A stretch of 64,000 nucleotides of DNA from Squalus acanthias (Eukaryota): assembly GCA_030390025.1 (NCBI GenBank), contig CM059449.1, positions 15,624,001 to 15,688,000 on the forward strand. The letters run 5' to 3'. The stretch's first letter is position 1. Each line of letters begins with the position of its first letter. The notes below the pieces were generated by a model that saw only the letters and a program-made list of their open reading frames with translations, ran no database searches and was not told the origin of the DNA. The position numbers were made by a program, and so were the translations under genes. This document shows positions 16,081 through 58,418 of the stretch, piece by piece.

Positions 16081-16132
16081 ATGAACTTTAGCCATGTTAT
16101 TGGAACAATCTGGGTAACGGCTATGATCGCCG
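16081..16132 (+). CDS. NCR3-like: Gene A exon 1, leader MNFSHVIGTIWVTAMIA
   Basis: Kozak context gacaccATGA, hydrophobic peptide, phase-1 donor G|gtaagg. Similar to the gene B leader. Confidence 0.75.
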
Positions 16133-17859
16133 GTAAGGAACTATTTTATGTTATGTCGGTTTCCAATTGCAAGATGAGAGTACAAACCGGAAAGAAAGCA
16201 ACCTCCTCTTGTAGCGCATTCTTATATTGTTTCATTTGTTAAATTCAAGTACTCTTACATGTTATGATCCGCACGCGGATAAATAAATAGGGCGTTAAGC
16301 TTTAAAAAGAAATCAATGGTACCGAAAGGACAGCTTTCCAAACTTGAAATGGTTGACGTGACTGAGAAATGTGCCGATTTCAAATACATACACGCGCAAT
16401 GATCACCGAGCCATTATTGTTTAGCAACCCTCGCCGACAATCAAAGCTGGCGCCCATCTTAAGTGAATGGCCCAAAATTGCAAGGAATTAAATCAACATT
16501 TTGAAATAACACAGATCCGAATAATTTCTTAATATCATTGAGGGGCCTAGATAGAGTGGATAGGAAGTATCTATGTCCCTTAGCAGAAGGGGTCAATAAC
16601 CAGGGGGCATAGATTTAAACTAATTGGTACAAGGTTTAGAAGGAAGTTGAGGAGAATTTTCTTCACCCAGAGGGCGGTGGGGGTCTGGAACTCAATGCCT
16701 GAAAGGGTGGTAGAGGCAAAAAACCTCATCGCATTTAAAAAGTACTTGGATATGCACTTGGAGTGTTGTAAACTACAAGGCTACAGACCAAATGCTGGAA
16801 AGTGGGATTAGGCTGGATTGCTCTTTGTCGGCCGGCGCGGACAAGATGGGATGAATGGATTCCTCCTGTGACGTAAATTTCTATGATTCTATGATTTGAT
16901 TTATTCCCAATCCTTTTATTTCGGTGTTCTGAAGTGATAATAAGATGAAAAATAGCCGATATATTAAGAATGTAACGAAGCAATTTTAAAAAACGCCATA
17001 AGTGTGTTAGAATATAAAGCCATGATAGTGTCAGAGAACTAAACTAAGCTTCTAAATGCACGGGTCAACTATTGTTAAAATCCTACTTTCAGCTTTCCTA
17101 TCGATGACACAAAATATATCTGGACTGGAAAGGGTGCATTGAGGAGCAACAAAACCCTTCCGAAGTGTAAAGAGATGATACGTGAGGAGAGATAAGCGAA
17201 GCATAAGTGTTTCAGTCTTAAAAAAAGGCAGTTAAGTGCCGGGGGCGGCGGGGGGTGGGTGTGGGGGGGGGGGGGGGGGGAACTTAATCATAAATGCTAT
17301 AGATAAAGTGCATCCCGATTATTCCGTCGAAGCCATGAAAGTAGAATCAGATCCATCAATGGGTAATAGTGAAAAGGGACATTTTAAGCTAAAAGCAAGA
17401 ACAACGTGTTTGTCTCAAAACTTGTAGGAATTTATACAGCGCGCAATAGAGGTAAATATTGGGGCTACTCAAAATGCAATTAAATACCGTGGCGGGAGTT
17501 CGTGTATCTAATGGTTGATTTTGATGGGTTGAGGGACATTTTCTCGTCACAGGCTTTTTAAGTGCCTTTAGAGCCATGTTTTATTGCACCAACTAACAAC
17601 ACGGGCTATATACAGTCAATGTCACTGTATTAATATCCGTGTTTTTATAAAAATATTTGAACAATGTATCCTTACAAATTGCCATTCGGCAGAGTGGCGG
17701 CGCGCACGCCTCGCTCAACTGTAACAATACTGATAATTTTTAAAGGTTTAAGGACTCTTTTAAACGCTGCGAGCATTCATGCCTAATATAGGAAGCAGTA
17801 CTTTCCAGGGCAAAATATCTCACCCCACTGTGTATTGTATTGACTTCACCCATCTACAG

Positions 17860-18201
17860 CAGTTACTGTTGGAAAAATCACCGTAATTCAGAGCCCGCAA
17901 TCACTCACCAAAACCGCGGGACAGACAGCGGGCCTGCTCTGTAGATATGAGGGTCCCAAAGGAATCGGCAGCTGCACGTGGCACCGAGGCACCAAACAGG
18001 GAAATGAAGTTTCCAACAATACAGCGGAATACAGAGGCAGGGTGTTCGGGGCAAGTGAAGAGGAATTCAGCCAGAGGGGAGACGCGTCCATTAGAATAAT
18101 CCAGCTGAAACCGGAAGATACCGGGCTCTATTTTTGCAAACTGGAGCTCTTGGGATTCGCTGCAGCAGACGGACCCGGGACAGCAGTGACCGTGGAACGG
18201 G
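17860..18201 (+). CDS. NCR3-like: Gene A exon 2, NKp30-like VJ-type Ig V domain (AVTVGKITVIQSP...LLC...IGSCTW...EYRGRV...DTGLYFC...GPGTAVTVER)
   Basis: 342-nt phase 1-1 exon (tacag| ... |gtaagt). Canonical V-set Cys, Trp, DxxxYxC and a J-like GxGT motif. Resembles recalled NKp30 motifs (IGSVTW, EV.N.T.E.RGR, YVC.VEVLG...G.GT). Confidence 0.9.
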
Positions 18202-18387
18202 GTAAGTTTGTATTTTTTTTGAAAAGTAGACGGGTTCTTTTAAGTGCGAGAGGTGTGCCCTGCCAGGTTACCACCCAGGATGGTAACGGCGAACTTCCAG
18301 CCCGGAGGACGTCTTAGCCCCCTTGCGTTACTCGTTGCCTTGGACCAGAAAGCGATAGGGAGATTTTTTAGACCTGTTATTCCATAG

Positions 18388-18539
18388 GTGCCGAAACGGA
18401 ATTTAAGATAATGAGCAACGAAGAGCCTACAAGCTTCTTCAGCGACGTCCGGATTCTATGGTGTGTCCGTGCTGCAGTGATAGCTTTACTGGTCGTTTTT
18501 GGAATCATCGTCGCTATCTATCTGCTTCCGTCAGAAGAG
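18388..18539 (+). CDS. NCR3-like: Gene A exon 3, stalk plus TM containing Arg (ILWCVRAAVIALLVVFGIIVAIYLL)
   Basis: Acceptor tccatag| is in frame (phase 1) with the V exon; donor GAG|gtactg is phase 0. The Arg sits near the TM N-terminus as in NKp30 (LLLRAG). Confidence 0.8.
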
Positions 18540-18643
18540 GTACTGGTAGCGAATGTCAATATATGTATTATTTACTGTTTGGGACGCATGGAAAAGTATT
18601 TTATAATTGTTTAGCACAACGATTACACTCTGGTTCCATAGAA

Positions 18644-19025
18644 TGAGGGAACGATAGCAGAGTGGTAATGTTACTGGACTGGTAATCCAGAAACCTGGAC
18701 TAATAATCCGAGGACAAGCGTTTAAATCCCACCACGGCAGCTGGGAAATTTAAATTCAATTAAATAAATCTGGGATAAAAAGCGAGCATCAGTAATGGTG
18801 AGCATGTAACTACCGGATTGTCGTCAAAACCCATCTGGTTCACTAATGTCCTTTAGGGAAGGAAATCTGCCATCCTTACCTGGTCTGGCCGATATGTGAC
18901 TCCAGACCCACAGCAATGTGGTTGACTCTTAACTGCCCTCTGAAATGGACTGGCAAGCCACTCAAGGGCAATTAGGGATGGGCAATAAATGCTGGCCTTG
19001 TCCACATCCCGTGAATGAATAAAGA
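18644..19025 (+). mobile_element. HE1-type tRNA-derived SINE
   Basis: tRNA-like head (gcagagtggtaatg... tttaaatcccacc), core acccatctggttcactaatgtcctttagggaaggaaatctgcc, and a HER1-type 3' tail. Other copies: one per array unit, 33050-33330(-), 54700-54835(-). Confidence 0.8.
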
Positions 19026-19349
19026 AAACGTTTATCGTTTAATTAATGTGAGATGCAGGAAGATAGCGGTGTGAGAAGGATTTCTGCACTTGGGTTCCAG
19101 CCAAGCAGAACCGCGCAACAATGTCTGGATCCTTGAAGTCTGGGTCTGTAACAGTCTTAGCTCAAGACTGAGCTGCGAGCACGTTTGATAAAGGCTCGCT
19201 CCCTCTCTCCGAACGTTAAGTGTTTCTAAAGCCGGGAGAGGAGAACACCTGCTCTCAAGACACATAAATTGAGATGATATGGGTTTGCAAAGTGTTCAGG
19301 ATGTCCAAGGAAACACAGGGGAAGATAATCCTTCCAAAGTGTCCGTTAC

Positions 19350-19795
19350 ATAGGATTACATTACATAGGATATACGGCACAGAAACAAGCCATTCGGCCC
19401 AGCTAGTCAATGCCAGTATTTATGCTCCACTCGAGCCTCCTCTAGTCTTTCCCCATCTAAATCGATCAGCATAACCCTCTATTCCCTTCTCCCTCATATG
19501 CTTGCCTAGCCTCCCCTTAAATGCATCTATACTATTCGCCTCAACCATTCCCTGTGATAGCGAGTTCCACATTCTCACCACTCTTTGGGTAAAGAAGTTT
19601 CTTCTGAATTCCCTATTGGATTTCTTGGTGACTATCTTATATTGATGGCCTCTAGTTATGCTCTTCCCTACAAGTGGAAACATTCTCTCTGCACCCACTC
19701 TTTCAAAACCTTTAATAATTTTAAAGACCTCTGTTAGGTCAGCCTTCAGACTTTTTGTTTTCAGGAGAAAAGAGACCCAGCCTGTTCATCCTTTC
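19350..19795 (-). mobile_element. CR1 LINE 3' fragment
   Basis: ORF 19420-19698 (TRGH...RRNFFTQRVV..WNSL). Confidence 0.85.
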
Positions 19796-20549
19796 CTTAT
19801 ATACATACTTTATTTGTTCTATGTTATTTTACTGAAAACAGCTCACTGTAAAGCAGTTTCAGTTTGAGCTTTCTCCGTACAACTTCACTGCTTTCCCAAG
19901 GTTTCTCTTGCTCTCCTCTGGGGTGAGAAGAACCTCCGCGGAAAATCCAGGCGATTCCACTTACAAGGGAAAAATTGTAGGATTGTATCGTGCGGTAACT
20001 AACTTATTGTGTGTCTGCAAACTGAGTCTACTTTGAGCTCCATAGCACATTTCCAAATAATTAATTTGGCCATTCTTAAAGAAGGTCGTAAATGCAATAC
20101 TGAGGGATATTTATATTCATCAGTTCTTGCAAAGCCCAGTTAAGCTCTACCATAATTAATTAGTCCTGAACACATGACAGCAGGACTAATACACTTTCCG
20201 AGTCTCATAAGGGTGATATTAACAATTTTGAAGTACCGCAATTTAAAAAAAAATGTAGCAGAGCTGGATTGACACCGCTTGACAGTTTCTGCCGGGTCGC
20301 CTGGGGTTTCCGCCGATCTTCTGCCGAAGTTACGGCGGGAGATACCCCAGCGAAAATTCGCCCCTAGTGTTTGTAACGTTCAGCTCAGAGTTATTTAATT
20401 AAACTGCTATGGACGCGATAGATAACACAGTCCTGTTTCCCAAATGGGAATTCTATGAAGATCCTGCAATAGTCAGTTATATAATTGAAGGACAGTGACA
20501 AATTAGCAGAAATAAATCATCCAAAGGTTTATAAACTAGTCTGAACTAC

Positions 20550-21016
20550 AAAAAAGTCTTGCTTTTCTATAGCGCATTTCACGACCACCGGACATCCCAA
20601 AGCGCTTTGCAGCCAATGAAGAACTTATGAAGTGGAGTCACTGTTGTAATGTAAGAAACGCAGCTGCCAATTTCTGCACAGCAAGCTCCCACAAACAGCA
20701 ATGTGATAATAATCAGATAATCTGTTTTTGTTATGTTGGTTGAGGGATAAATATTGGCCAGGGCACCGGGGATAACTCCCTTGCTCTTCTTCGAGATAGT
20801 GCTATGGGATCTTTTACAGCCAACTGAGAGGGCAGACGGGGCCTCGGTTTAATGTCTCATCCGAAAGACGGCACCTCCGACAGTGCAGCACCCCCTCAGT
20901 ACGACACTGGAATGTCAGCCTAGATTTTTGTGCTCAAGTCTCTGGAGTGGGATTTTAACCCACAATCTTCTGACTCAGAGGCGACAGTCCTACCCACTGA
21001 GCTACGGCTGACGCCG
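20550..21016 (-). mobile_element. Deu-domain SINE (SacSINE1-like) with L2-type tail
   Basis: tRNA-like head (gtagctcagtgggtag), core gtgctgcactgtcggaggtgccgtctttcggatgagac. Further copies at 35870-36275 and 43815-44262, both (-). Confidence 0.7.
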
Positions 21017-21620
21017 ATATGATAGCAATTGATGTTTGATTTTTACTCTGCAGCCCAAGATTGTCTTGGACATTCGAGGATATATTTTTCTTAAATCGTG
21101 TTGTACAGAAATACATCATCAAAGGTCTCGAACAAATGTTTAAAATAAGGTCTGTAGCGTAGCACAAACATTATGTACAGCCCATAATTTATGTAATCTT
21201 TAGCCCGTTTCTGTCGGAAACTCTACCAATTCACTGTTGTATTAATTACGGTACAGTTAAGGTACTGTTCCCCATGTAAGGGTATGATGCTTCATTAAGC
21301 GCTGGTCTTTTTCCCATTGCCCTATTTATCTTCACACTTTCTATTTTCCTTGTGATGAGATTTGTCACTGCGTTTCATTACTTTGTTTTCCAATACTTGT
21401 TTTTCACTGAGCATCGTGGACTGCTGTAAATGTTGCTGTTCAGCATTATACCGGAAACCAGAACTGGTGTTTTTGCCCCTGCAAAATATCTATATGCGGG
21501 AAATAAGTGTACGGTGCCCCTGCCCCATCGTCACCAACACCCAAATCCATCAGTTGACAAGTAATCTACAAATGGTAATAACTTGGTCTGAAATTCATTT
21601 TTTTGTTACTTTTGTGACAG

Positions 21621-21668
21621 AACGAACCTACTTTTTATAAAAAGCTAAAACAAGGAGAACATTTTCAG
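21621..21668 (+). CDS. NCR3-like: Gene A cytoplasmic exon NEPTFYKKLKQGEHFQ (first half of the ITAM-like motif)
   Basis: ttttgtgacag| acceptor, CAG|gtaaat donor, 48 nt. Only the phase-0 frame is open, which matches the TM exon. Confidence 0.6.
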
Positions 21669-21730
21669 GTAAATATGTAAAGAGCTGGTATCCTCGTCTC
21701 CGACAGCCTAATGTCTTGCTTTTTATCAAG

Positions 21731-21770
21731 TATCCACGCATAAACCCATCAATAAATGCAATGTTTTCGG
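21731..21770 (+). CDS. NCR3-like: Gene A cytoplasmic exon YPRINPSINAMFS (second half of the ITAM-like motif)
   Basis: ctttttatcaag| acceptor, G|gtaaag donor, phase 0 to 1. The preceding intron is only 62 nt. Confidence 0.45.
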
Positions 21771-22075
21771 GTAAAGCAGTGGCACCTATATGTTATGTTT
21801 CAATCATTCTAATCTGGCACAATTTGCATAAAATAAATAATGGTTTCCGTCATTTTATTCCAATTTGGGGTCATAATAGTGGCAGTAAAGGTATCTGGTA
21901 CTATTGCTGAAAGGCTAAACCATGGTAATACTCGAACTGGAAATCTGAATAAGGTGGTTACAAACGCACCAGATTTTTACACTTTGATTGTGATTTACAA
22001 TAAATGTGATTGCCATTGAAACTATTGAAATTAACTTTTCAAATTTTATTTTGATGAATATGTTTCCTCATCTAG

Positions 22076-22180
22076 GAGGCAATGGAAGTACTGAACATTC
22101 AACCCATGTGGGACCTTTTTCTCCTCCCCCAAATATTGCATCTAACGCCGACTTCAGACTGCCCACTTCCGATTATGATG
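22076..22180 (+). CDS. NCR3-like: Gene A cytoplasmic exon GGNGSTEHSTHVGPFSPPPNIASNADFRLPTSDYD
   Basis: tttcctcatctag| acceptor, G|gtgatt donor, 105 nt, phase 1-1. FSPPP-NIA resembles gene C tail modules. Confidence 0.5.
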
Positions 22181-32960: not shown

Positions 32961-35900
32961 TGGGCTGGGTGTGCCATTGCCGGTGCCGAGCTCGATGCCG
33001 GGTGGCCCATCTAGTCTCTTTCTTATTATATTTCGTAGCAGTTAGTTACAACTGAGTGACTTGCTCGGCAATTTTAGAGGGCAGTTAAGAGTCAGCCACA
33101 TGTAGGTCGGACCAGGCTGATTTCCTTCCCTGAATTAGTGAACCAGATGTTTTTTTAACGACAATCCGATAGTTTCATGCTCACCATTACTGATACCAGC
33201 TTTTTAATCCAGATTTATTTAATTAACTGAATTTAAATTCCACAGCTGCCGTGGTGGGATTGAAACTCACGTCTCTGGATCATTAGTCCAGGCCTCTGGA
33301 TTACTAGTCGAGTGACAATACCACTACGCTTATCGGCACAAGAACATGGATCGGGAGATCTGACTGCAACCTAATTTTATTCTTCTCACATTTTACATGC
33401 ATTCACTTAGTTCCATTTCTCGCTGTAGAAAGTCGTTTTCCTACCTCTCCTTATATAGATGATGACAAATCTTCCAGCCCATACATATTTTAATGGATTT
33501 GTTCCATCCAGTGTAAATTCCGCTCTATATTGTTATAGAAAAATATGGTGTGCTGAATTTGGGCATACTTCTGCTACGGGCCGTGGCGATGCTTAAGTGT
33601 GCCGAGCTTTGAGACGTCCTGCCAAGTAATAATTTCTCGGGGAGGTGGTTCTGCCGATCGCCTGCCATGACTTCGCTGGAAGTTCGGCAGAACCCCGCTT
33701 TATCTATTACGCGCTTCTTCTGATTTCCGCCGATCTTCCTCTGACGTTACCAGAAGAGAGCGGAAGAACCCCGCAGAAGTCGTTTCGCCCGCCCCTCTTG
33801 AGTTTAACAAAAAACATTAATTTTAATAAAAGTTACAACGGAAAATCAACAGAACAACCTGACATGATTCAACTGAGAAGAACTTTTATTCCGAAAATGT
33901 CAAATACTTTACAGGATTATGATGAAATGTAAGGAGTTATGTGATGAAACTAGGCTGAGTGAACAGTAACGAGTATGAACGCTCAACATGTTGGTTTTCA
34001 TTTTAACAGCGGCATGAACCAGTTTATCTTCCAGGATAGAACGCCCCTAAAAATAGGGGACTAATATATTTCATACAAATGTGATAAATGTTCACAACCA
34101 ACACTAAAGAGTCTGATGTTAAAGCATTGGAGATTCCAAGCTCTTGTTACTGAATTATGTGTGGATAAACCTCACTCACTAAGTTAGAGGACAAAACATT
34201 CCCCTGGAAATTCCCATGGAGGGTTCTCTGATCATCCGCCGTTGAAGATCCAACAGGACCCCCGAGCTTCCGCCCAAGTTACGGCGGGAGATCGGGACAT
34301 CTCTGCGGAAATTCCACCACTTGTCCATCGCGGGTGGGGGCAGGGGCGTCTCATCATTGGGGTGAAATGTATCGGCTCCGCTTACTTCACCGAAGCTACA
34401 GCACCCCTTCTCGCTTCACACGGCGCTCAGTTTGATTGCTGTCCTGAACATTCAGCGTGGCATATTGGAATTTTTCATCTCCCTCTCTCTATTGAGATGA
34501 AAGTGTTTTAGTGTTGAATAAAATATTGTAAACTGATTATAGCGTAGGGCCTCAAACCCAGCGCACCAGATTTGTGCAGTTTCAATGGAATATAATTCAA
34601 CCCAGTAAACATTCTACATATAATTAGAATATGACTCCACCTATCAAATATTGTTTCGTTAAATAGGATAGATCGCGCCGTCCTATATATTCCTGTCCTT
34701 TTGAATTTATTTCAGCGTGTCAACGATTGCACGATTTAAGTAACAAGCAAGGTAAGCAGTCGATCAAATTAACACATCATTCTAATGTTAAAATCCATGC
34801 ATTTGGAACAATTCACACTTAATGAATTCAGGAACAGTGGTTCAGTCAGCATCTGGGAAAGTCAGATTAATATTTGGGAATAACTGTTCAAGAGCACTTT
34901 CCGTTCGAAGGCAAAGTGCCAGCCCACCGGTTACCCTGTGTTTTCTCTTCCAGGTGCTGACTGACCTGCTTTGCATATCCAGCATTTTCTGTTACGGCTT
35001 CAGATTTCCTCCTTATCTCGACTTATCAAAGTAGATGTATTTTTGCATGTGTAAGACTGGGTGCCCCTATTTTGGGGTCTCTTTTAATGTTCCTGTGTGT
35101 ATCTCGTGCTTTTTTTATTCGTTCATGGGATGTTGGCGGCGCTGGCAAGGCCGGCATTTATTGCCCATCCCTAGTTGCCCTTGAGAACGTGATGGTGAGC
35201 CGCCTTCTTGAACCGCTGCAGTCAACGTACTCCCACATTGTTTTTCGTAGTGGCTTTTTGCAACTGCGTGGCCATTTTAGAGGACAGTTAAGAGTACACA
35301 GCGCGTGCTCACCCGTGGAGACCCGAATTTCTGGCCCGTTTGCTACCGTTCCCTATATATGTTTGCGCATGCACCTGCTTATTTGTCTGTGGCTATATGT
35401 ATTTGCGAGTGTCTGCGAGATTGTGTCTTTCTGTGTCTGCAGGTGTGTGAATTCTGGAACTGTTAGGTTTCATTTCATGCCTTTCCTGGTTGGCTTTCTG
35501 TTGAATTATAAATAATATTTTAGTCCCCGTCTCTATTCAATTTCGATTTTCAACTTGCCGCGCCTGTGCGTAAAACTAGCGTTTGGGTTGCGCCGCACCT
35601 GTGCTTTACGCCTGTGTGGCAAATTTAGAATCTACCACAAATGTACAAGAAAAATAGTTGAGGCCGTCCAACCTCGTTTCATCTTTAGACTTTTACATCC
35701 AACTGAGAGAACTTTTTAAAGGATAATCTACCTGGAAAACTAAACAAGAGGTCAGTAGGTTTAAAAATAACAAAAACTGCCCAAGTAATTTTGCTACAAA
35801 CCCGATTTGATCTTCTGCACTCAGAGCTGTCATAATTCCTCTCTATAAAGCTCAGAAAAAAGAAAAAAGAAAGACTTGCATTTATTTAGCACCTTTCACC

Positions 35901-38079: not shown

Positions 38080-38114
38080 CTGTTTCATGGATCTCTGAGT
38101 AGAGCGGATCTGGA
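38080..38114 (-). CDS. NCR3-like: Gene B 35-nt micro-exon (S)PDPLYSEIHET
   Basis: tcttttgcttcag| acceptor, G|gtcaat donor, phase 2 to 1, YxxI motif. Confidence 0.7.
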
Positions 38115-38224: not shown

Positions 38225-38246
38225 CTGGTGGGTTGCTGAAGAGCGA
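38225..38246 (-). CDS. NCR3-like: Gene B 22-nt micro-exon VALQQPT
   Basis: Long pyrimidine tract ending ctcctcacag|, AG|gtgact donor, phase 1 to 2. Confidence 0.7.
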
Positions 38247-38557: not shown

Positions 38558-38689
38558 CTCTCTTCTGATGCCGGCTGATAACAACTATGATTATGATGAT
38601 GATGATGATCAGGAGAGGAACCACTATCGTTAATAAGACGCGTGGTGGGATCATTGGTGCGGGCTCGCCGTGGCAGCTCTCTCCACCAC
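38558..38689 (-). CDS. NCR3-like: Gene B stalk plus uncharged TM (VLLTIVVPLLIIIIIIIIVVI-SRHQKR)
   Basis: tttacacacag| acceptor, G|gtaaca donor, 132 nt phase 1-1; basic stop-transfer residues follow the TM. Confidence 0.85.
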
Positions 38690-40255: not shown

Positions 40256-40606
40256 TGTGTTGACGCCGTTCCACGGTCACTCTCGTCCCGGGTCCCTCTG
40301 CTGCAGCGATTCCCACGAGCTGCACTTTGCAGACATAGAACCCGGTATCTTCCGGTTTCAGCTGGATTATTCTAATGGACGCGTCTCCCCTCTGTGTGAA
40401 ATCCTCTTCACTTGCCCCGAACACCCTGCCTCTGTATTCCGCTGTATTGTTGGAAACTTCATTTCCCTGTTTGGTGCCTCGGTGCCACGTGTAGCTGCCG
40501 ATTGCTGTGGGACCCTCATATCTACAGAGCAGGCCCGCTGTCTGTCCCGCGGTTTTCGTGAGTGATTGCGGGCTCTGAATTACGGTGATGTTTCCAACAG
40601 TAACTG
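40256..40606 (-). CDS. NCR3-like: Gene B exon 2, NKp30-like VJ-type Ig V domain
   Basis: Within ORF 40182-40649; cttgcag| ... A|gtaagt, 351 nt phase 1-1. AIGSYTW, EYRGRV, DTGFYVC and GPGTRVTVE motifs. Confidence 0.92.
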
Positions 40607-42891: not shown

Positions 42892-42934
42892 CGGAGAACA
42901 TAGCGAATGCCCAGGTAACTGCAGCCCAATTCAT
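42892..42934 (-). CDS. NCR3-like: Gene B exon 1, leader MNWAAVTWAFAMFS
   Basis: gagaATGA start, hydrophobic peptide, phase-1 donor G|gtaagc. Similar to the gene A leader (MN...W..AM). Confidence 0.75.
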
Positions 42935-49078: not shown

Positions 49079-49417
49079 ACAATGGGTTGATGAGTGGAAT
49101 CAGAGTGTTCCAATCCCCAGATGCCATCAATGTAATAGAAGGAGGATCGGTACAGCTGAACTGCACTTTTGAGGCGAATAGTACTGTCGGACGAGTTGTT
49201 TGGAGGCGGGCCTCACAAAACATGGAAGTGTCGGTTCGGAATCCTTTCTATCAGAGCCGGGTAACGAAGCCAGTGTCGAAATTATTTGCAGAAAAAATGG
49301 CTTTCATTGAAATGATCAATTTACTGACAATGAACGCGGATTTATATAACTGCGAGGTGGAAATTCCGGCGCTTGGGAAAGCAGGCGGGACAGGAACACA
49401 ACTTATAATAACTGACA
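49079..49417 (+). CDS. NCR3-like: Gene C V exon, divergent NKp30-like VJ-type Ig domain
   Basis: tactctag| ... A|gtaagt, 339 nt phase 1-1. VFQSP...EGGSVQLNCTF...VGRVVW...YQSRV...DLYNCEVEI..LG...GTGTQL. Leader exon not securely located. Confidence 0.85.
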
Positions 49418-50970
49418 GTAAGTAGAAAAGATCAGAGTTCGTTTTAAGAATTTACCAATATTTTGACATTGGTATGGCTGTACATGTGCTATGCTAAGAG
49501 ATTTCAGTTCGTTTGCTGAATTGTGTCCGTGTGTCAATATCACTTTCAAAGTACATCAGGAACAATTGTTCGACAATTAATATCCTGAAAGTGCCGTATA
49601 TCTGACTTGAATCTGGCTATTCAAGGCGCGGTGCTTTAGGAATAGGAATACACGAGCTTCAAGCTACTCCCCCACCCCCACCACCCCACCAGCTGAAGGT
49701 TAGTGTTATTTCAAAATAGTACTTTGCATTATCCCTTGATATTCTTGCTTGGCACCTTACCTTACCTCTGTTAGGGAGGTGCTGCTGAAGAAGCCTTGGC
49801 GAGTTTAATGAAATAGGCTTTAGGTATAATTTACTGTTTTCGATATAAGCCTTTATTTTAAACAGGTTAGCGTCTTGGTTAAAATGAAAAGAATTTGCAC
49901 GCTAGTATTTCAACAAATAATTATAGTTTTTTCAGTTTCCACGTGGATGCAATACCTCAGATTACATAAAAATAGGAAACGGCCTTTCTTTAACGTATAG
50001 AACGCCACTGGAATGATATTTCAGTTTTCATATCCTATAACTGAGCAATCCAAATTTAATTATTAAATTGCGCACTAGTGGCCTTCGTTATGGCGATTTC
50101 TGATTTCAATTGATAGGCGGGGTGTGGGAGGCGGGGCAGTGTGATCGCCTGATATACACTCCGCCCAGTAATGCGTCCAATTGCCTTAAAATAAAACTGA
50201 ATATAGGGCGCACCAAAGCCAAATGCTGCGGATGCTGGTAATCTGAAAAAAGAAACAGAAAATGCTGGAAAATACTCAGCAGGTCAGGCAGCATCTGTGG
50301 AGAGTGAGAAACAGAGTTAAAGTTTCAGGTTTCTGACAGAAGGGCATCGATCCGAAACGTAAACTCTGTTTCTCTCTCTCCCTGCAGATGCTGCCTGACA
50401 TGCTGAGTGTTTCCAGCATTTTCTGCTTTTTTTATATTGAATATTGGGCGAGTTGTACAGCGGTCGGCCAATATGATTCTGTCTGCCTTGAGAGCACGTC
50501 CATGTCCAATTTCACCCCTACAACAACACAAAAGCCAAATACTGCGGATGCTGGAAATCTGAAATAAAAACAGAAAATGCTGGAAATTCTCAGCCGGTCA
50601 GGCAGCGTCTGTGGAGAGAGAAACAGAGTTAACGTTTCAGGTCGATGAGCCTTCGTCAGAACTGGAAAAAGTTGGAGATGGAACAGGTTTTTAAGCAAGT
50701 GTAGGGGCCTGGAAAGGGGGAGGGGAGGAAAGAACAAAAGGGAAGGTCTGTGACAGGATGGAAGGCAGGAGAGATTAAAGAGACAAAAGTGATGATGGTG
50801 CAATGCAAGAGGAGATGGTAATGGGACAACTTAAGAAACAAAAGATGACTCTAGATGAAGTATAAATGGCAATGGCAGAATGATCGATCACCCCACCATT
50901 TTCTTGCATTATCTTTCACTTCAACCAAGCGCCACCATACTGACTATATTATTGTTTCTGTTTCTAACAG

Positions 50971-51312: not shown

Positions 51313-54147
51313 TATGAATTAGCTGCGCAAATAGAGGTAAACGAATATGATTTGATTGGGATTACTGAAACATGGCTCCAGGGTTGCCAAGGCTGGGATC
51401 CAGCGGTACTCAGTATTCAGGAAAGATAGGCAAAAACGAAAAGGAGGTGGGGTAGCATTGCTGGTTAAAAAGGGCATTAACACAATTGAAAGGAAGGATA
51501 TTAGCTCTGATGATGTGGAATCTGTATGGGTTGAACTGAGAAATAACAAGGGGCAGAAAACGTTAGTGGGAGTGGTATATGGACCTCCAAACAGTAATGC
51601 GGAGGCTGGGGATGGCATTAAAAGGGAAATTAGAGAAGCGTGCAATAAGGGCACTGCAGTCATCATGGGTGACTTTAATCTACATAGAGATTGGGCTAAC
51701 CAAATTAGTAACAATACTATGGAGGAGGAATTCCTGGAGTGTTTACGGGATGGTTTCCTGGACCAATATGTCGAGGAACCAACTAGACATCAGGCCATCT
51801 TAGACTGGGTATTATGCAATGAGAAAGGGTTAATTAGCAATCTTGTTGTGCGAGGCCCCTTGGGTCGGAGCGATCATAATATGATAGAATTCTTCATTAG
51901 GATGGAGAGTGAAGCAGTGAATCAGAGACTAGGGTCCTGAATTTAAATAAAGGAAACTACGATGGTATGAGGTGTGAGTTGGGTAGGATTGATTGGGGAA
52001 TGTCACTCAAAGGGTTGACGGTGGATAGTCAATGGCAAACATTCAAAGACCGCATGGAGAAACTACAGAATTTGTTCATCCCAGTTTGGCATAAGAATAA
52101 AACAAAAAGGGTGACTCAACCGTGGCTAACAAGGGAAATTAGGGATATATAAGAATCAAGGAGAGGGCATATAAATTGGCCAGAAAAAGCAGTAACCCTG
52201 AGGATTGGGAGCAGTTTAAGATTCAACAAAGGAGGACAAAGGGATTTATTAAGAAGGGAAAAATAGAATACGAGAGTAAGCTTGCTGGGAACATAAAAAC
52301 TGACTGTAAAAGCTTTTATAGATATGTGAAGAGAAAAAGATTAGTGAAATCAAGCATAGGTCCCTTGCAGTCAGAATCAGGGGCACTTATAATGGGGAAC
52401 AAAGACATGTCAGCCCAATTAAATAGATATTTTGGTTCTGTCTTCACAAAGCAGGACACAAATAACCTCCCAGAGATGTTGGGGAACATAGGGTCTGATG
52501 AAAGGGAGGAACTGAAATAAATCAGTATTTGTAGGGAAATGGTGTTCGGGAAATTGAAGGGATTGAAGGCCGATAAATCCCCAGGGCCTGATAATCTACA
52601 TCCCAGGGTACTTAAGGAAGTGGCCCTAGAAATAGTAGATGCATTGCTGATCATCTTCCAACATTCGATGGAATCTCAAACAGTACCCATGGATTGGAGG
52701 GTAGCTAATGTTACCCCACTATTCAAAAAGGGTGGTAGAGAGAAAACGGGGAATTACAGACCCGTAAGCCTGACATCGGTAGTGGGGAAAATGCTAGAGT
52801 CCATTATAAAAGATGTAATAGCTGATCACTTGAAAAACAGTGACAGGATCGGACAAAGTCAACATGGATTTACAAAAGGTAAATCATGCTTGACTAATCT
52901 ACTGGAATTTTTTGAGGATGTAACTTGTAAAATAGATAAGGGAGAACCAGTGGATGTGGTGTATTTCGACTTCCAAAAGGCTTTTGATAAGGTCCCGCAT
53001 AAGAGATTAGCGTGTAAAGTTAAGGCACATGGGATTGGGGGCAAGGTATTTACTTGGATAGAGAACTGGTTGGCAGACAGAAAGCAAAGAGTTGCAATAA
53101 ACGGGTTTTTTTCCGAGTGGCAGGCAGTGACTAGTGGGGTACCGCAGAGATCGGTCCTTGGACCCCAGCTATTCACAATATATATTAATGATCTAGACAA
53201 GGGAACTAGATGTAATATCTCCTAGTTTCCAGACGACACAAAACTGGGTGGGCGTGTGTGCTGTGAGGAGGATGCCGATAAACTCCAGGATGATTTGGAC
53301 AGGTTGGGTGATTGGGCAGAAGCGTGGCAGATGCAATATAACGTGGAAAAATGTGAGGTTATGCACTTTGGTGTCAAAAACAGAAAGGCAGATTATTATC
53401 TGAATGGCAATAGATTGGGAGAAGGGAAAGTGCAACGAGACCTGGATGTCCTTGTGCACCAGTCGCTGAAGGTAAGCATGCAGGTGCAGCAGGTGGTTAA
53501 GAAGGCAAATGGTATGTTGCCCTTCGTAGCGAGAGGGTTTGAGTACAGGAACAAGGATGTCTTGCTGCAGTTGTACAGGGCCTTGGTGAGACCACACCTT
53601 GAGTACTGTGTGCAGTTTTGGTCGCCTTATCTGAGGAAGGATGTTCTTGCCATGGAAGAAGTTCAGCGAAGATTCACAAGGCTGATACCTGGGATGGCAG
53701 GAATGACGTATGAAGAGAGATTGGGTCGATTGGGCTTATACTCGCTGGAGTTTAGAAGAATGAGAGGGGATCTCATTGAAACTTATAAATTTCTGACAGG
53801 ACAGGACAAACTAGAAGCAGGAAGAATGTTCCCGATGGTCGGGGAGTCCAGAACCAGGGGTCACAGTCTAAGGATAAGGGGTCAGCCATTTAAGACAGAA
53901 ATCAGGAGGAATTTCTTCACCCAGAGAGTGGTGAACCTGTGGTATTCTCTGCCACAGAAGGCAGTAGAGGCCAATTCATTAAGTAGATTCAAGAAGTAGT
54001 TGGATATATTTCTTAAGGCTAAAGGGATCAAGGGATATGGGGAGAAAGCAGGGACAGGGTACTGAATTTGGATGATCAGCCGTGATCGCATTGAATGGCG
54101 GAGCAGGCTACTCCTGCTCCTATCTTCTATGATTCTATGATTCTATG
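51313..54147 (+). mobile_element. Near-complete CR1 ORF2 (APE endonuclease + RT) with stops and frameshifts, intronic in gene C
   Basis: ORFs 51356-51940 (GDFN, SDH), 52539-53225 (SCLTNL, DFQKAFDKV) and 53256-53999; (ctatgatt)n tail. Confidence 0.95.
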
Positions 54148-54155
54148 GTAGTTTC

Positions 54156-55390: not shown

Positions 55391-55425
55391 CAATATTGCG
55401 CCTTGCAGTAACATTATTTTTAATG
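55391..55425 (+). CDS. NCR3-like: Gene C micro-exon, 35 nt, NIAPCSNIIFN
   Basis: Pyrimidine tract ending caaag|, G|gtgagt donor, phase 2 to 1. Confidence 0.6.
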
Positions 55426-55647
55426 GTGAGTATTAGTTATATGCATTTAACTGTTCGATTTTCTAAATAGTCCTTGAAGCAATTTTTTTTAATGAGCAAT
55501 TATTGTTAGTAAAGGACTTCAGTAGTTTCGCTGATTTTTATTGCTGGATGGACATAAGAGGTGCATACAATTTTAAACTCGTTTCACAGTCTCAAATGTC
55601 TTGTTTGCATCAAAGGAAACCTTAATTTTCGGCTTTTGTTCCCACAG

Positions 55648-55669
55648 AGTTAGCTCCACAAGCATTAAG
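55648..55669 (+). CDS. NCR3-like: Gene C micro-exon, 22 nt, ELAPQAL(R)
   Basis: ttttgttcccacag|, AG|gttggt, phase 1 to 2. Confidence 0.65.
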
Positions 55670-55756
55670 GTTGGTTGGTGGTTATGAGGGTGACGCATTT
55701 TTTTAATTACCTGGATTTTTGTTTCAGCTATGTGATTGTATCTTTTCTCTTGCTAG

Positions 55757-55806
55757 ATCCTGGATGGACATCGCTGGTTCCGCCTATGATGAAATTAATC
55801 CAGCTG
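55757..55806 (+). CDS. NCR3-like: Gene C micro-exon, 50 nt, SWMDIAGSAYDEINPA (ITIM-like SAYDEI)
   Basis: ttttctcttgctag|, G|gtgagt, phase 2 to 1. Confidence 0.7.
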
Positions 55807-56549
55807 GTGAGTGACGCACCTGCAGCGCAGTTAACCTGCTCCTCAATGGACCGGTTGCTTCAGAGCCTACATGCACTGCCCGGTGTACTCCTGAGGCACC
55901 AGTGCCAGAGAGATCCCATGGTTGGAGCCATGAGATGTGCCGAACTAACTGATCCTACTCTGGCTGGTGATTGGGTGCTACCGTCGCCGGGATTTTAATC
56001 GGGAGCCTGGTTGGGTGCAGGGCAGAAAGACTGGCTGGGAGCTGTGAGGTGGGAGGTATCAGGTGCGGGCCGGAGGTGAGGTTGGGTTGTCGGGGGCCGG
56101 AGGAGGATTGGGGAGGAGGGAGGGAAGCATCGGGGCCGGAGCGTCGAGGAGGTGAGGGAGAGAAGATCGGGGCAGGAGCATTGGGTGGGGGGTGGTGTGG
56201 ACAGGGAAAGATTATCGGAGCCGGAGCATCAGGGGAGAAGGGAGAGAACATCGGGGCTGCAGCCTGGGGGCAAGGGGGGATCGGGAGAAAACATCTGGGG
56301 GTGGGGGTGGGGGGGAGAGGTGGGATCTGCTTGCACCATCTTTTCAGGTCGTGCTTTCCCTATCATAACAACTCACTGCATAAAAAATTCTCCTGAACTC
56401 CCCTCTGGTACTTTTGCCAATTATCTTGAATCGGTATCCTCTGGTTACCGACCCTCCCACCAGTGGAAACGGTTTCTTGTAGTCGAACTGTTTTTAAAAA
56501 GATTGCATTAACGTTACAAAGCTTTCATGGTGAACTTTTACTTTTGTAG

Positions 56550-56571
56550 ATGTTCCTCCACCAATGGGAAG
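56550..56571 (+). CDS. NCR3-like: Gene C micro-exon, 22 nt, DVPPPMG(R)
   Basis: cttttgtag|, AG|gtcggt, phase 1 to 2. Confidence 0.65.
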
Positions 56572-56673
56572 GTCGGTAAATCTCAGAGTTAACGTTTCCT
56601 ACATCTTTTATGCTAATTGCTCTGTAACTCTGCAGTAACACTCATTTTCTCTTATTTGTTTGTCGTCCCGAAG

Positions 56674-56708
56674 GAATGAGCCGTTCTGTGATGAAACTAA
56701 CTTGGATG
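56674..56708 (+). CDS. NCR3-like: Gene C micro-exon, 35 nt, NEPFCDETNLD
   Basis: gtcccgaag|, G|gtgagc, phase 2 to 1. Confidence 0.65.
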
Positions 56709-58285
56709 GTGAGCACCACCGATTAAAGAATCATTTAACAAGATTCAATAAGGCTTCAGTATTATACTTGTGTAAATAGCTCAGGATCAAACTCAGTAGC
56801 TTGGTGTTTGCTATTTTTTAAAATATTCGTTCTTTGGATGTGGGCATCACTGGCAAGGCCAGCATTTATTGCCCATCCCTAATTGCCCTTGAGAAGGTGG
56901 TGCTGAGCCGCCTTCTTGAACCGCTGCAGTCCGTGTGCTGAAGGTACTCCCACAGTGCTGTTAGGGAGGGAATTCCAGGATTTTGAGACAGCGACGATGA
57001 AGGAACAGTGATATACTTCGAAGTTAGGATGGTGTGTAACTTGGAGGGTAACTTGGAGGTGATGGTGCTCCCATACGCCTGCTGCCCTTGTCCTTCTATG
57101 TGTTACAGTTCGCGGGTTTGGGAGGTACTGCCGAAGAAGCCTTGGCGAGTTGCTGCAGTGCATCTTGTAGATGGTACACACTGCAGCCACGGTACACTGG
57201 TGGTGGAGGGAGTGAATGTTTAAGGTGGTGGATGCGATGCCAATCAAGTGGGTTGCTTTTTCCTGGATGGTGTCGAGCTTCTTGAGTATTGTTGGAGCTG
57301 CACTCATCCAGCCAAGTGGAGAGTATTCCATCACACACCTGACTTGTGCCTGGTAGATGGTGGAAAGGCTTTGGGGAGTCAGGAGGTGCGACACTCGCCT
57401 CAGAATACAGTACCCCTGCCCTGCTCTTGTAGCCACATTATTTATGTGACTGGTCCTGTTAAGTTTCTGGTCAATGGTGACACCCCCAGGATGTTGATGG
57501 TGGGGGATTCAGCTATGGTAATGCCGTTCAATGTCAAGGGGCGGTGGTTAGAGTCTCGCTTGTTGGAGATGTAATATTCTTCAGCTTGTGCTGTTGGACA
57601 CGGGGCAATTTTAACCGAACCCGACCATCGGGAAACTGACGAGAGCGGGTGCAACGCCGGCATTACACGCCGCTCGATTTTACTCTCCAGTGAAGTCAGT
57701 GGAGGGTAATATGGGGCAGGGGGTGTAAAACCGGAGTTCCACCCGATCCCGTGGGTTTTCCTGGCCGGCCTTAGGTTAAAATTACCCACGGTATTAGCAG
57801 TGAGACTGCTGGAGCGCTATTGAGTTACAGCACCGGTTAGGAGGAGCGTAGAGTCCCCCCTGCACCGTACTGATGCTATACTTTAGCCACAATCTCTGAA
57901 GAATACCTTTTATTGCTTCAGTATGACATCGCTTTTGATTTGTTGGGGCAGCTACACATCATCCGTTTAATGCTTCATTATATTCAGTTCAACAACGCCC
58001 GCTGGATGCTGGATGTCCTAAACTATCTTTACACATTGCCCCTCTAGACAGGGATAAAGGGCACCCTCACCCGGCAGTTAGAGTTGGAATGAAACTGGTC
58101 GCATAATGAAATGGGAGCCGACTGCATTGAAACCTTCCCACTCCCACTCCCCTTTGATAAACAATTATTAATTATTATTGAAAAATGATAAAAACCAAGA
58201 CGCAGTTCAGAATGCAGCTGTGCTAAACACAGTCTCAGATATAACAGAGTTACGAATTTCTTGTTTGTTCATTGTCTTTCCACAG

Positions 58286-58307
58286 ACTTCTCTCCACCTT
58301 TGCAATG
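58286..58307 (+). CDS. NCR3-like: Gene C micro-exon, 22 nt, DFSPPLQ(C)
   Basis: gtctttccacag|, TG|gtgcgt, phase 1 to 2. Confidence 0.65.
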
Positions 58308-58384
58308 GTGCGTAGATATCACTGTGACATTTTGCTGCCTTTATTTTCATGGCACGTACCGCGTGTCCTCCCTTTGTGGTTCAG

Positions 58385-58418
58385 TGATGAAGAGGTCTAT
58401 GCCAAAATCCACCGCATG
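58385..58418 (+). CDS. NCR3-like: Gene C micro-exon, 34 nt, DEEVYAKIHRM (3' boundary uncertain)
   Basis: ctttgtggttcag| acceptor in phase 2, YxxI motif. The only donor-like site is non-canonical (TG|gcaagg); otherwise the frame reads on to TAG at 58502. Confidence 0.55.

What the first reader, a model, noticed from the sequence alone, without database searches (positions are those of the whole stretch)
16081..58418. Three-gene NKp30-like receptor cluster with three different signalling architectures (candidate paired-receptor system in a cartilaginous fish)
Seen: three germline-joined VJ Ig exons, each followed by a phase-compatible TM exon. A has a TM Arg and an ITAM-like tail; B has an uncharged TM and Tyr/ITIM-like motifs; C has a TM Lys and a multi-module Tyr tail. 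A and B are convergent, B and C are divergent. Established: human NKp30/NCR3 is a single VJ-type domain with a TM Arg, signals through CD3zeta/FcRgamma and has a short tail; homologues are known in sharks and expanded in Xenopus. Inference: A and B are an activating/inhibitory pair with nearly the same ectodomain. The ORF track misses most of this because the tails are split into tiny exons.
Basis: partly seen in the sequence, partly recalled or inferred. Interest (0 to 1): 0.9.

Follow-up and report, generated by a model that had tools for sequence, protein, structure and literature searches.

The report
Shark NKp30-like receptor gene trio
Three immune-receptor genes of the NKp30 family lie side by side in a shark genome, and two of them share an almost identical outer domain while carrying opposite-looking signalling parts; the family itself is already known in sharks.

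Summary
The core observation holds. Three single-exon VJ-type V-set domains (A +, B -, C +) match human NKp30 best among solved structures. A and B sit in a well-supported clade with deposited shark NCR3 proteins.

Gene B is fully modelled: seven phase-consistent exons collinear with shark ITIM-bearing orthologues. Its own motifs are non-canonical, and the distal ITIM is lost to a 1-nt gap.

Gene A has a leader like that of a bamboo-shark gene (P0008). Its TM exon carries an Arg that aligns with the mammalian NKp30 Arg.

A and B are 93% identical in DNA only inside the V exon, which points to exon-limited gene conversion. The polarisable changes fall on A (5 of 14 sites against 0 for B).

C's micro-exon tail is real: seven exons, 44 of 72 residues identical to a horn-shark model.

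Not confirmed: A's "ITAM" (spliceable, rare by chance, no RNA or orthologue support), C's "TM Lys" and C's leader.

The shark NCR3 family with both receptor types is already described or deposited. This scan also noted similar clusters elsewhere in this genome. Verdict: new members of a known kind.

The parts
16081..16132 (+). Gene A leader exon (ATG at 16081; ends in phase 1, donor GT at 16133)
   Evidence: Ruler read. tblastn to the Chiloscyllium P0008 leader gave 62.5% identity over 16 aa, E 0.024.
17860..18201 (+). Gene A V exon (VJ-type, phase 1 to 1)
   Evidence: Best PDB match is NKp30 at 1.1e-13. Pfam V-set 5e-12.
18388..18539 (+). Gene A stalk/TM exon with Arg in the membrane span (phase 1 to 0)
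   Evidence: The Arg aligns with the TM Arg/Lys of mammalian, frog, sturgeon and nurse-shark NCR3 proteins.
21621..21668 (+). Candidate gene A tail exon a (contains Y-K-K-L). Unverified.
   Evidence: Good acceptor and donor, phase 0. Only 2 such spliced ITAM patterns were found in both strands of the window. No reads and no homologue.
21731..21770 (+). Candidate gene A tail exon b (starts Y-P-R-I; ends in phase 1, so a further exon is needed). Unverified.
42892..42934 (-). Gene B leader exon
   Evidence: Ruler read. tblastn to the P0002 leader gave 80% identity over 15 aa, E 0.003.
40256..40606 (-). Gene B V exon (93.3% identical in DNA to A's V exon)
38558..38689 (-). Gene B stalk/TM exon, uncharged core
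   Evidence: tblastn to P0007 and P0004 gave E 0.001 and 4e-4.
38225..38246 (-). Gene B 22-nt micro-exon
   Evidence: Matches P0167 T-A-T-L-Q-Q-P at 5 of 7 positions.
38080..38114 (-). Gene B 35-nt micro-exon with a P-L-Y-S-E-I motif
   Evidence: 72.7% identity to P0167 over 11 aa, E 0.01.
35802..35842 (-).
   Evidence: 71% identity to P0167 over 14 aa, E 0.002. Ruler read.
34396..34488 (-). Gene B last coding exon with an F-Q-Y-A-T-L motif. The stop falls where orthologues have the Tyr of a second ITIM.
   Evidence: tblastn to P0004 gave E 1e-8, to P0002 1.3e-5 and to P0007 6e-5. Sequence read.
49079..49417 (+). Gene C V exon (divergent, long branch)
   Evidence: Best PDB match is NKp30 at 7e-8, next-best 0.006. 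Terminal branch 1.48 in the tree.
49640..49698 (+). Candidate gene C Pro-rich stalk exon (phase 1 to 0). Unverified.
   Evidence: inference from splice sites and phase.
49866..50000 (+). Candidate gene C TM exon, with Lys-Met-Lys-Arg at the outer edge and a stop after a basic stretch. Unverified.
   Evidence: It is the only TM-like exon reachable in frame, and only through the stalk exon.
55391..55425 (+). Gene C tail micro-exon, 35 nt (Cys where relatives have Tyr)
   Evidence: 66.7% identity to P0156 over 21 aa, E 6.5e-4. Sequence read.
55648..55669 (+). Gene C tail micro-exon, 22 nt
   Evidence: Found by a phase and length scan. A-P-Q is shared with P0156.
55757..55806 (+). Gene C tail micro-exon, 50 nt, with an S-A-Y-D-E-I motif
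   Evidence: 60% identity to P0156 over 20 aa. Sequence read.
56550..56571 (+). Gene C tail micro-exon, 22 nt
56674..56708 (+). Gene C tail micro-exon, 35 nt (Cys in place of Tyr)
   Evidence: Phase scan. 5 of 12 residues identical to the matching P0156 module.
58286..58307 (+). Gene C tail micro-exon, 22 nt
58385..58418 (+). Gene C tail micro-exon, 34 nt, with a V-Y-A-K-I motif and a GC donor. The gene probably continues beyond this point.
   Evidence: P0156 has about 50 further residues after this module.

Best explanation
The window holds three members of the shark NCR3 (NKp30-like) multigene family, embedded in LINE debris.

Gene B (42934 to 34396, minus strand) is the local orthologue of the ITIM-bearing type found in horn shark, catshark and bamboo sharks. 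It has a leader, a V exon, an uncharged TM exon and four small tail exons.

Gene A (from 16081, plus strand) is a different, older gene. Its leader resembles that of Chiloscyllium P0008. Its TM exon carries an Arg at the position of the NKp30 TM Arg. It most likely signals through an acidic-TM ITAM adaptor such as CD3zeta or FcRgamma; this step is inferred.

The V exon of A and B has been homogenised by gene conversion limited to that exon, so the two genes present almost the same ectodomain on opposite-looking signalling chassis. That is the hallmark of a paired receptor. Since the conversion, the changes that can be polarised (5 of 14 sites against 0) fall on A, and 4 of the 14 differing sites are homologous to human NKp30 residues that touch B7-H6.

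Gene C has a very divergent V exon. Its tail is a ladder of 22-nt and roughly 35-nt micro-exons homologous to the horn-shark NCR3-like X3 tail. C's leader and TM exon are unresolved, and C may be decaying.
For: Family. NKp30 is the top PDB match for A (4 NKp30 entries at 1.1-1.9e-13, next a diabody at 2.1e-12). It is also top for C (4 NKp30 entries at 7-8e-8, next 0.006). An exhaustive search with B's V exon found 382 proteins at E<=1e-3. The best single-V hits are shark proteins named NCR3 (P0001, P0007, P0008), and mammalian NCR3 is also among the hits. In the tree of 51 rows, A and B are sisters at 100/98, inside a 7-row shark clade at 95/95.

Gene B model. Seven exons are phase-consistent and collinear with P0167, P0002, P0004 and P0007.

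Gene A. The leader matches P0008. The TM Arg aligns with the Arg/Lys of P0072, P0130, P0137, P0140 and P0048.

Conversion. DNA similarity of 93.3% runs over 359 nt at 17845-18203 versus 40621-40263. All the other 23 of 24 blastn hits lie outside the exon, and most recur at several other places in the window (repeats). dS is 0.043 and dN is 0.062; 16 codons differ, 14 of them non-synonymously. A and B are 88% identical, while A is 58% identical to P0008, which shares its leader type, and the two Chiloscyllium genes P0008 and P0007 are 73% identical.

Polarity. At 5 differing sites, 3-4 of the 4 outgroup rows agree with B; at none do they agree with A. The terminal branches are 0.098 for A and 0.013 for B.

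Contact sites. 4 of the 11 positions homologous to the human contact residues listed in Table II of PMC3135353 differ between A and B; hypergeometric p = 0.029.

Gene C tail. Seven collinear micro-exons share 44 of 72 residues with P0156 (my count).
Against: No transcript evidence joins any of these exons. The only runs found are contigs of uncertain type with a small word share. They cover only the V exon, and their mismatch counts fit B-type transcripts cross-laid on A.

B's tail motifs have F or P at position -2 instead of I/V/L/S, and the distal ITIM is lost, so an inhibitory function is not assured.

No full-length A-type orthologue was found (4 proteins, none with an A-type TM or tail). 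A's tail is therefore unknown.

dN/dS of about 1.4-1.7 rests on 16 codons and is not significantly above 1.

The contact-site enrichment is modest, is post hoc, and assumes the human binding mode.

C's V exon is unplaced in the tree (no starred set holds it).
Confidence: 0.75

Rival explanations
1. A carries both a TM Arg and its own split ITAM (Y-K-K-L, seven residues, Y-P-R-I). C has a TM Lys plus a multi-Tyr tail. The three genes therefore have three distinct, functional signalling architectures.
For: Both A exons have strong splice sites, lie 62 nt apart, and are in phase with the TM exon donor at 18539. A control over both strands of the 64-kb window found only 2 spliced ITAM patterns under the same site rules, one of them this one. 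Exon a begins N-E-P-x-F-Y, resembling C's 35-nt module R-N-E-P-F-C and P0156's R-N-E-T-I-Y. From my own recall, ITAMs are typically split over two exons in adaptor genes.
Against: Depth is 0 in 4 of 4 runs over 21450-21849, though these runs do not cover A's TM exon either. The best match of either exon to the stored proteins was E = 2. Exon b ends in phase 1 and no closing exon was identified. For C, no TM exon can be entered in phase 1, and the Lys lies at the membrane edge next to Arg rather than in the core.
Confidence: 0.2
2. Birth-and-death debris. A, B and C belong to a very large NCR3-like expansion, and at least B and C are decaying. B has lost its distal ITIM. C has no leader, no clear TM exon, Cys in place of Tyr in two modules and a GC donor. 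On this view the A/B likeness has no functional meaning as a pair.
For: B has a 1-nt gap at the Tyr codon, and the shifted frame downstream still reads like the orthologues' C-terminus (against P0002). C sits on a terminal branch of 1.48. No C leader was found. LINE endonuclease and RT ORFs fill C's large intron and follow its last exon. Scan notes list 8 other NKp30-like findings over about 2 Mb of the same piece (unchecked).
Against: All three V exons are open, with the invariant Cys, Trp, Tyr-x-Cys and G-x-G-T. All seven B exons keep their phase and splice sites. Contigs whose mismatch counts fit B end exactly at the V-exon acceptor and continue into sequence that is not the intron, as spliced mRNA would. 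Y/C/H/N alternation also occurs in the intact horn-shark model P0156.
Confidence: 0.3
3. These are SIRP-family genes, as several automatic RefSeq names suggest ('signal-regulatory protein beta-like'), and not NKp30-family genes.
For: SIRP V domains appear in the PDB list for A at 7e-9 to 1e-7. NCBI names for P0002, P0009, P0020 and P0025 say SIRP-like.
Against: NKp30 scores about 15-18 bits higher than SIRP for A and is the only strong hit for C. These genes have a single V domain and no C1 domains. The nurse-shark deposits from the laboratory that described the family are named NCR3, and mammalian NCR3 proteins are among the hits. One search lists MT914154-914161 as nurse-shark NCR3 genes.
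Confidence: 0.04

Closest known systems
Nurse shark NCR3 family (Kinlein et al. 2021, Immunogenetics 73:333; deposits such as P0001 and P0048 = QTT61904.1)
   Same: Single VJ-type V domain. A and B are 67-69% identical to P0001. The family contains both an uncharged-TM, Tyr-tail form (P0001) and a TM-Lys, tail-less form (P0048).
   Different: A different species. Here an Arg-TM gene and a Tyr-tail gene share a converted V exon (88% identity). I could not check whether such a pair, or the micro-exon structure, is described in print, because the paper is not held. I saw only its citation and recall its abstract.
Human NKp30 / NCR3
   Same: Best solved-structure match. One V-type domain. A TM Arg at the aligned position (shown with mammalian orthologues). 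Leader / V / TM-exon layout (the layout is recalled).
   Different: About 38% identity. The human gene is single-copy and activating only. Here there are several genes, Tyr-motif tails and micro-exon ladders.
RefSeq/GenBank models in other sharks: Chiloscyllium plagiosum LOC122541165 X2 (P0167), Heterodontus francisci models (P0002, P0156), Scyliorhinus canicula LOC119975537 (P0004), Chiloscyllium punctatum P0007 and P0008
   Same: B is collinear exon by exon with P0167, P0002 and P0004. C's tail is collinear with P0156. A's leader matches P0008. P0004 fuses an ITIM-type gene with a neighbouring gene whose TM has an Arg, so the two types are neighbours there too.
   Different: The orthologues keep canonical ITIMs (V-Q-Y-A-T-L, V-L-Y-A-T-V, V-Q-Y-A-E-I, M-V-Y-A-K-V). 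B has F at position -2 and has lost the second motif. P0156 has an uncharged TM, whereas C's TM is unresolved.
Paired activating/inhibitory receptor families kept alike by gene conversion (SIRP alpha/beta, KIR, PILR; recalled from general knowledge, not checked here)
   Same: Near-identical ectodomain. One partner has a charged TM, the other a Tyr-motif tail. Similarity is limited to the ectodomain exon. The activating-type copy diverges faster.
   Different: No shared ligand, co-expression or signalling has been shown here. The V domain is of the NKp30 lineage and the host is a shark.

Membership tests
NKp30/NCR3 family | One V-set domain with a J-like G-x-G-T-x-(L/V)-x-(V/I) end, encoded in a single exon (germline-joined VJ) | tested here: met
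   The open V exons of A, B and C end in G-P-G-T-A-V-T-V, G-P-G-T-R-V-T-V and G-T-G-T-Q-L-I-I. Pfam V-set hits. Invariant C28, W41, Y91, C93, G105 and T108 across 45 rows.
NKp30/NCR3 family | Closest solved or human relative is NKp30 rather than another IgSF V domain | tested here: met
   the top 4 of 1334 matches are NKp30, but the margin over antibody V domains is only about 4 bits; the top 4 of 8 are NKp30, with a margin of about 16 bits.
NKp30/NCR3 family | Groups with bona fide NCR3 sequences in a tree | tested here: inconclusive
   A and B fall in a 95/95 clade with nurse-shark NCR3 P0001 and other shark proteins. C has a long branch and is unplaced. All 51 rows were hits of one search, so no true outgroup was included.
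NKp30/NCR3 family | Basic residue in the TM for pairing with an ITAM adaptor | tested here: met
   Met for A only, where the Arg aligns with the mammalian NKp30 Arg. B has an uncharged core. C is unresolved.
NKp30/NCR3 family | Linkage to the MHC or an MHC paralogous region | not testable with these tools
NKp30/NCR3 family | Binds a B7H6-type ligand | not testable with these tools
   Only a mapping of the A/B differences onto human contact residues was possible.
Paired activating/inhibitory receptors | Two linked genes with near-identical ectodomains | tested here: met
   88% protein and 93.3% DNA identity, confined to the V exon.
Paired activating/inhibitory receptors | The inhibitory partner carries a canonical ITIM, (I/V/L/S)-x-Y-x-x-(I/V/L) | tested here: not met
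   B has P-L-Y-S-E-I and F-Q-Y-A-T-L, with position -2 being P or F. Its distal motif is cut off by a stop. The orthologues P0002, P0004, P0007 and P0167 do carry canonical motifs.
Paired activating/inhibitory receptors | Same ligand, co-expression, opposite signals | not testable with these tools
   No usable RNA data.
ITAM-bearing receptor (gene A) | Y-x-x-(L/I), 6-8 residues, Y-x-x-(L/I) in the cytoplasmic tail | tested here: inconclusive
   The motif is present only in an unverified two-exon splice model. There is no read coverage and no homologue.

The most novel reading that the evidence does not exclude
A and B are a true paired receptor of the NKp30 lineage in a shark. An old Arg-TM gene and an old ITIM-type gene are kept alike by repeated V-exon-limited gene conversion. 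After each conversion the activating copy diverges at the ligand-contact face, as in a host-pathogen or ligand arms race. The activating copy additionally carries its own split ITAM. This would show that the paired-receptor strategy operates in a cartilaginous fish, in the non-rearranging VJ family thought to be close to the ancestors of antigen receptors.
Probability: 0.2. Interest if true: 0.7.

Novelty: new member of a known kind. Interest (0 to 1): 0.45.

Why it matters
NKp30 is, as I recall from the Kinlein abstract, the one NK receptor with recognisable orthologues from sharks to humans, and its VJ-type domain is discussed as a relative of the antigen-receptor precursor. A locus where an Arg-TM gene and an ITIM-type gene share a freshly converted V exon gives a concrete system. 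It can be used to ask whether activating/inhibitory pairing and concerted evolution already operated in cartilaginous fish. The 22 + 35-nt tail cassettes, with Tyr swapped for Cys, His or Asn between copies and species, suggest a simple way in which signalling strength can be tuned by exon gain, loss or skipping. For annotation, the exon maps given here show why automatic pipelines mis-name or fuse these genes.

Tried and rejected
1. RNA support. The look-up of sequencing runs gave only 3 holders with 0.08-0.10 of the sampled words, none on record as RNA. Read laying on 16050-22049 (6000 letters, 4 runs) was dominated by repeats. Only the V exon was covered by unique contigs, nothing lay on A's TM or tail exons, and no joint between A's exons was listed. 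The mismatch counts (6 in 17859-18069, 4 in 17906-18062) equal the A/B differences in those spans, so I read these contigs as B-type transcripts. This is inference, because the contig letters were not shown.

2. A TM exon for C orthologous to the P0156 TM. A local alignment at 49661-49759 looked suggestive, but its score of 33 equals the shuffled-query mean of 32.5 +/- 3.4. I therefore dropped the idea that this is a decayed TM exon with stops.

3. C's leader. Signal-peptide-like ATG exons and tblastn with the leaders of stored proteins gave nothing convincing.

4. Upstream C tail cassettes (the W-I-Y-D-D-I module of P0156) were not found.

5. A small ITAM-adaptor gene around 21.0-21.8 kb. I inspected the region and saw no leader or acidic-TM exon.

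6. A-type full-length orthologues. The last word-index search, with P0008, returned only B-type proteins.

7. Literature. Kinlein 2021 and Flajnik 2012 are not held. Searches found only citing papers. I saw passages of PMC12227049, PMC12272517, PMC10450919, PMC6514059, PMC5371597, PMC11599192 and PMC3135353. None states whether shark NCR3 pairs or micro-exons are described, so my 'already known' judgement rests on the deposited sequences and on my recall of the Kinlein abstract. That paper's text and supplements, which I could not see, may already list the TM and tail types.

10. The search of earlier findings by sequence was blank, which means nothing.

Exons were compared one by one, and the joined step was left out.

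Full report
WHAT IS THERE. The window has no N runs and is largely LINE debris. Endonuclease and RT domains occur at 51356-53222, 59457-60722 and 31174-31857, and many RT-tail ORFs are scattered through it. Three open V exons stand out. By ruler, A is 17860-18201 (+), B is 40606-40256 (-) and C is 49079-49417 (+). All three pass Pfam V-set. A scores 5e-12 and B 2.1e-12. C scores 5.7e-6, only just above the cut-off at 26.9 against 26 bits. Each runs through a J-like G-x-G-T motif in the same exon, so 'germline-joined VJ' is correct. A tblastn of the 150 stored homologues found no fourth V exon.

FAMILY. Against all PDB chains, A's four best matches are human NKp30 (1.1e-13 to 1.9e-13). The next are antibody V domains (2.1e-12) and SIRP (7e-9). 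For C only 8 chains pass 0.01; the top four are NKp30 (7-8e-8) and the next scores 0.006.

An exhaustive HMMER search with B's V exon gave 382 proteins at E<=1e-3, 61 at <=1e-10 and 11 at <=1e-30. The best single-domain hits are shark proteins:
- nurse shark NCR3 (P0001, 69% identity);
- horn shark P0002;
- Chiloscyllium P0007 and P0008, which UniRef names NCR3;
- catshark P0004.

Mammalian NCR3 (P0063, P0072 and others with the L-L-L-R-A-G/A-F-Y TM) is also among the hits. In a tree of 51 V domains, A and B are sisters (100/98) inside a 7-row shark clade (95/95). C sits on a terminal branch of 1.48 and is not placed. The tree holds only hits of one search, so it cannot exclude other IgSF families. 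The automatic 'SIRP-like' names are outweighed by the PDB scores and by the single-domain architecture.

GENE B. tblastn with shark models recovers every part in order, on the minus strand:
- leader 42934-42892 (80% identity to P0002 over 15 aa);
- V exon 40606-40256;
- TM exon 38689-38558, with an uncharged Ile-rich core;
- a 22-nt exon 38246-38225;
- a 35-nt exon 38114-38080 with P-L-Y-S-E-I (73% identity to P0167 over 11 aa);
- the last exon 34488-34396 (E 1e-8 to P0004).

The phases run 1, 1, 1, 2, 1, 0, stop, without conflict.

The orthologues carry two canonical ITIMs (for example V-Q-Y-A-T-L and V-L-Y-A-T-V in P0002). B has F at position -2 of the first motif. At the second, the Tyr codon lacks one base, which gives a stop. 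The shifted frame downstream still reads like the orthologues' C-terminus down to the stop. B is therefore of the inhibitory type by descent, but its present inhibitory capacity is uncertain. The gap could also be an assembly error.

GENE A. The ATG at 16081 opens a 52-nt leader exon. This leader resembles that of Chiloscyllium P0008 (10 of 16 residues, E 0.024) and is unlike the B-type leader. After the V exon and a 186-nt intron, the exon at 18388-18539 continues in phase for 50 codons. It contains a hydrophobic span with an Arg. In local alignments this Arg falls on the TM Arg of meerkat NKp30 (P0072). It also falls on the TM Arg/Lys of frog (P0130), sturgeon (P0140), P0137 (source not looked up) and nurse-shark (P0048) proteins. 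That is the sequence basis for an adaptor-coupled, activating-type receptor. The coupling itself is inferred.

A'S ITAM. The exons at 21621-21668 and 21731-21770 have good acceptors and donors and lie 62 nt apart. They are in phase with the donor at 18539, and spliced together they give Y-K-K-L, seven residues, Y-P-R-I. As a control I joined every GTRA donor to every pyrimidine-preceded acceptor 55-200 nt downstream, on both strands of the window. This gave only two junction-spanning ITAM patterns, one of them this one. The pattern is therefore not common noise.

Against it:
- exon b ends in phase 1 with no closing exon identified;
- there is no read depth there in 4 of 4 runs, although those runs do not cover A's TM exon either;
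- the best match of either exon to the stored proteins was E = 2;
- no A-type full-length orthologue could be found.

I put this ITAM at about one in four.

A AND B AS A PAIR. blastn of 15-24 kb against 30-64 kb finds 93.3% identity over 359 nt, from 14 nt before the acceptor to the end of the shared coding part (17845-18203 versus 40621-40263). All the other 23 hits lie outside the exon, and most recur at several other places in the window, as repeats do. The introns, leaders and TM exons are unrelated. dS is 0.043 and dN is 0.062. Sixteen codons differ, 14 of them with an amino-acid change.

A and B are 88% identical. A is only 58% identical to P0008, which shares its leader type. P0008 and P0007, the two types within Chiloscyllium punctatum, are 73% identical. 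Old genes with young, species-specific V exons indicate gene conversion limited to the V exon, probably more than once in shark history.

Polarising the 14 differences with four shark outgroup rows gives a clear direction. B keeps the outgroup residue at sites 39, 69 and 90 (4 of 4 rows) and at sites 6 and 95 (3 of 4 rows). A keeps it at no site with three or more rows. The terminal branches are 0.098 for A and 0.013 for B. A also departs from a column that is at least 90% conserved (Val at position 95) and has gained a Cys at position 39.

I used the human NKp30 residues that contact B7-H6 (Ile50, Gly51, Ser52, Val53, Leu80, Ser82, Phe85, Leu86, Glu111, Leu113, Gly114; Table II of PMC3135353, passages seen) together with the HMMER alignment. 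A and B differ at the homologues of Val53, Leu86, Glu111 and Leu113. That is 4 of 11 contact positions against 14 of 114 overall, hypergeometric p = 0.029. This is a modest, post-hoc signal. It fits a pair whose ligand affinity has been shifted in the activating copy.

GENE C. The V exon is intact but only 30-40% identical to anything else. Seven micro-exons lie in the same order as the tail of horn-shark 'NCR3-like isoform X3' (P0156), and each has AG/GT edges (one has a GC donor):
- 55391-55425
- 55648-55669
- 55757-55806
- 56550-56571
- 56674-56708
- 58286-58307
- 58385-58418

The phases alternate 2>1>2>1, as expected for 22 + 35-nt cassettes. By my count from those outputs, 44 of 72 residues are identical. 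Two modules carry Tyr (S-A-Y-D-E-I, which fits the ITIM consensus, and V-Y-A-K-I). Two carry Cys where P0156 has Cys or Tyr. P0156 goes on for about 50 more residues, so C probably continues past 58418 into or beyond the LINE at 58.6-60.7 kb.

The 'TM Lys' is not established. No TM-like exon can be entered in phase 1 from the V exon. The only route is a 59-nt Pro-rich exon (49640-49698) followed by an exon at 49866-50000. In that exon Lys-Met-Lys-Arg precedes an 18-residue core, and a stop follows a basic stretch. A tempting similarity to the P0156 TM at 49661-49759 is no better than chance. No leader was found. C may be functional with unrecognised exons, or it may be decaying.

RNA. Laid on 16050-22049, unique contigs cover only the V exon. 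Two of them end exactly at 17859, one base before the exon's first base. That base equals the last base of the leader exons. One contig continues for about 140 letters that do not fit the intron, as a spliced mRNA would. The numbers of differing letters equal the A/B differences in those spans, so these are most simply B-type transcripts. A's expression remains untested.

WHAT IS KNOWN. From recall of the abstract of Kinlein et al. 2021, eight divergent, MHC-linked NCR3 subtypes are described in nurse shark. The paper is not held and I saw only its citation. PMC12227049 lists MT914154-914161 as nurse-shark NCR3 genes. The deposits include a TM-Lys, tail-less form (P0048, QTT61904.1) and an uncharged-TM form with a P-L-Y-A-D-M tail (P0001). 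The catshark model P0004 fuses an ITIM-type gene with a neighbour whose TM has an Arg. So both chassis types, and their adjacency, are already in public data, though mostly mis-named.

This scan's own unchecked notes list eight further NKp30-like findings, from 122 kb up to about 2 Mb upstream on the same piece. Two of them are called paired-receptor clusters. I found none of the following stated in any text I could read:
- the exon-limited conversion between an Arg-TM gene and an ITIM-type gene;
- the one-sided divergence of the two copies;
- the explicit 22 + 35-nt cassette maps.

VERDICT. The paired-receptor reading of A and B is well supported at the sequence level but untested functionally. 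A's ITAM and C's TM Lys are unproven. Novelty: new members of a known kind, with a tidy example of V-exon conversion.

Noticed in passing
window 34396-34404 (minus strand): Gene B's reading frame stops where orthologues have the Tyr of the distal ITIM. One base appears to be missing, and the shifted frame downstream still reads like the orthologues' last residues and stop. This is either a real loss of the motif or an assembly indel.
   Followed up: partly
window 21683-21745 (+): Inside the 62-nt 'intron' between A's two candidate tail exons, another frame reads Y-P-R-L ten residues before Y-P-R-I. The DNA around both is similar, which suggests a small local duplication.
   Followed up: no
window 51356-54000 and 58641-60725 (+): LINE elements with endonuclease and reverse-transcriptase domains sit in gene C's large intron and just after its last recognised exon. 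Similar RT-tail ORFs fill 1-15 kb and the A-B interval.
   Followed up: partly
proteins P0020, P0151, P0152 and P0156 (Heterodontus francisci): Isoforms of one horn-shark NCR3-like gene either include or skip the TM exon. They also differ by single residues at micro-exon junctions, so soluble or TM-less forms and NAGNAG-type splicing are predicted for this tail type.
   Followed up: no
protein P0018 cluster (Polypterus senegalus): An NCR3-like bichir protein shares a 90% cluster with a model named 'PRC2A protein, partial'. PRRC2A is (from my recall) an MHC class III neighbour of NCR3 in human, which hints at conserved linkage in bichir.
   Followed up: no
window 17974 region (codon 39 of A's V domain): A has a derived, unpaired Cys directly before the invariant Trp, where B and four other shark sequences have Tyr. 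The position is homologous to human NKp30 Val53, a B7-H6 contact residue.
   Followed up: partly
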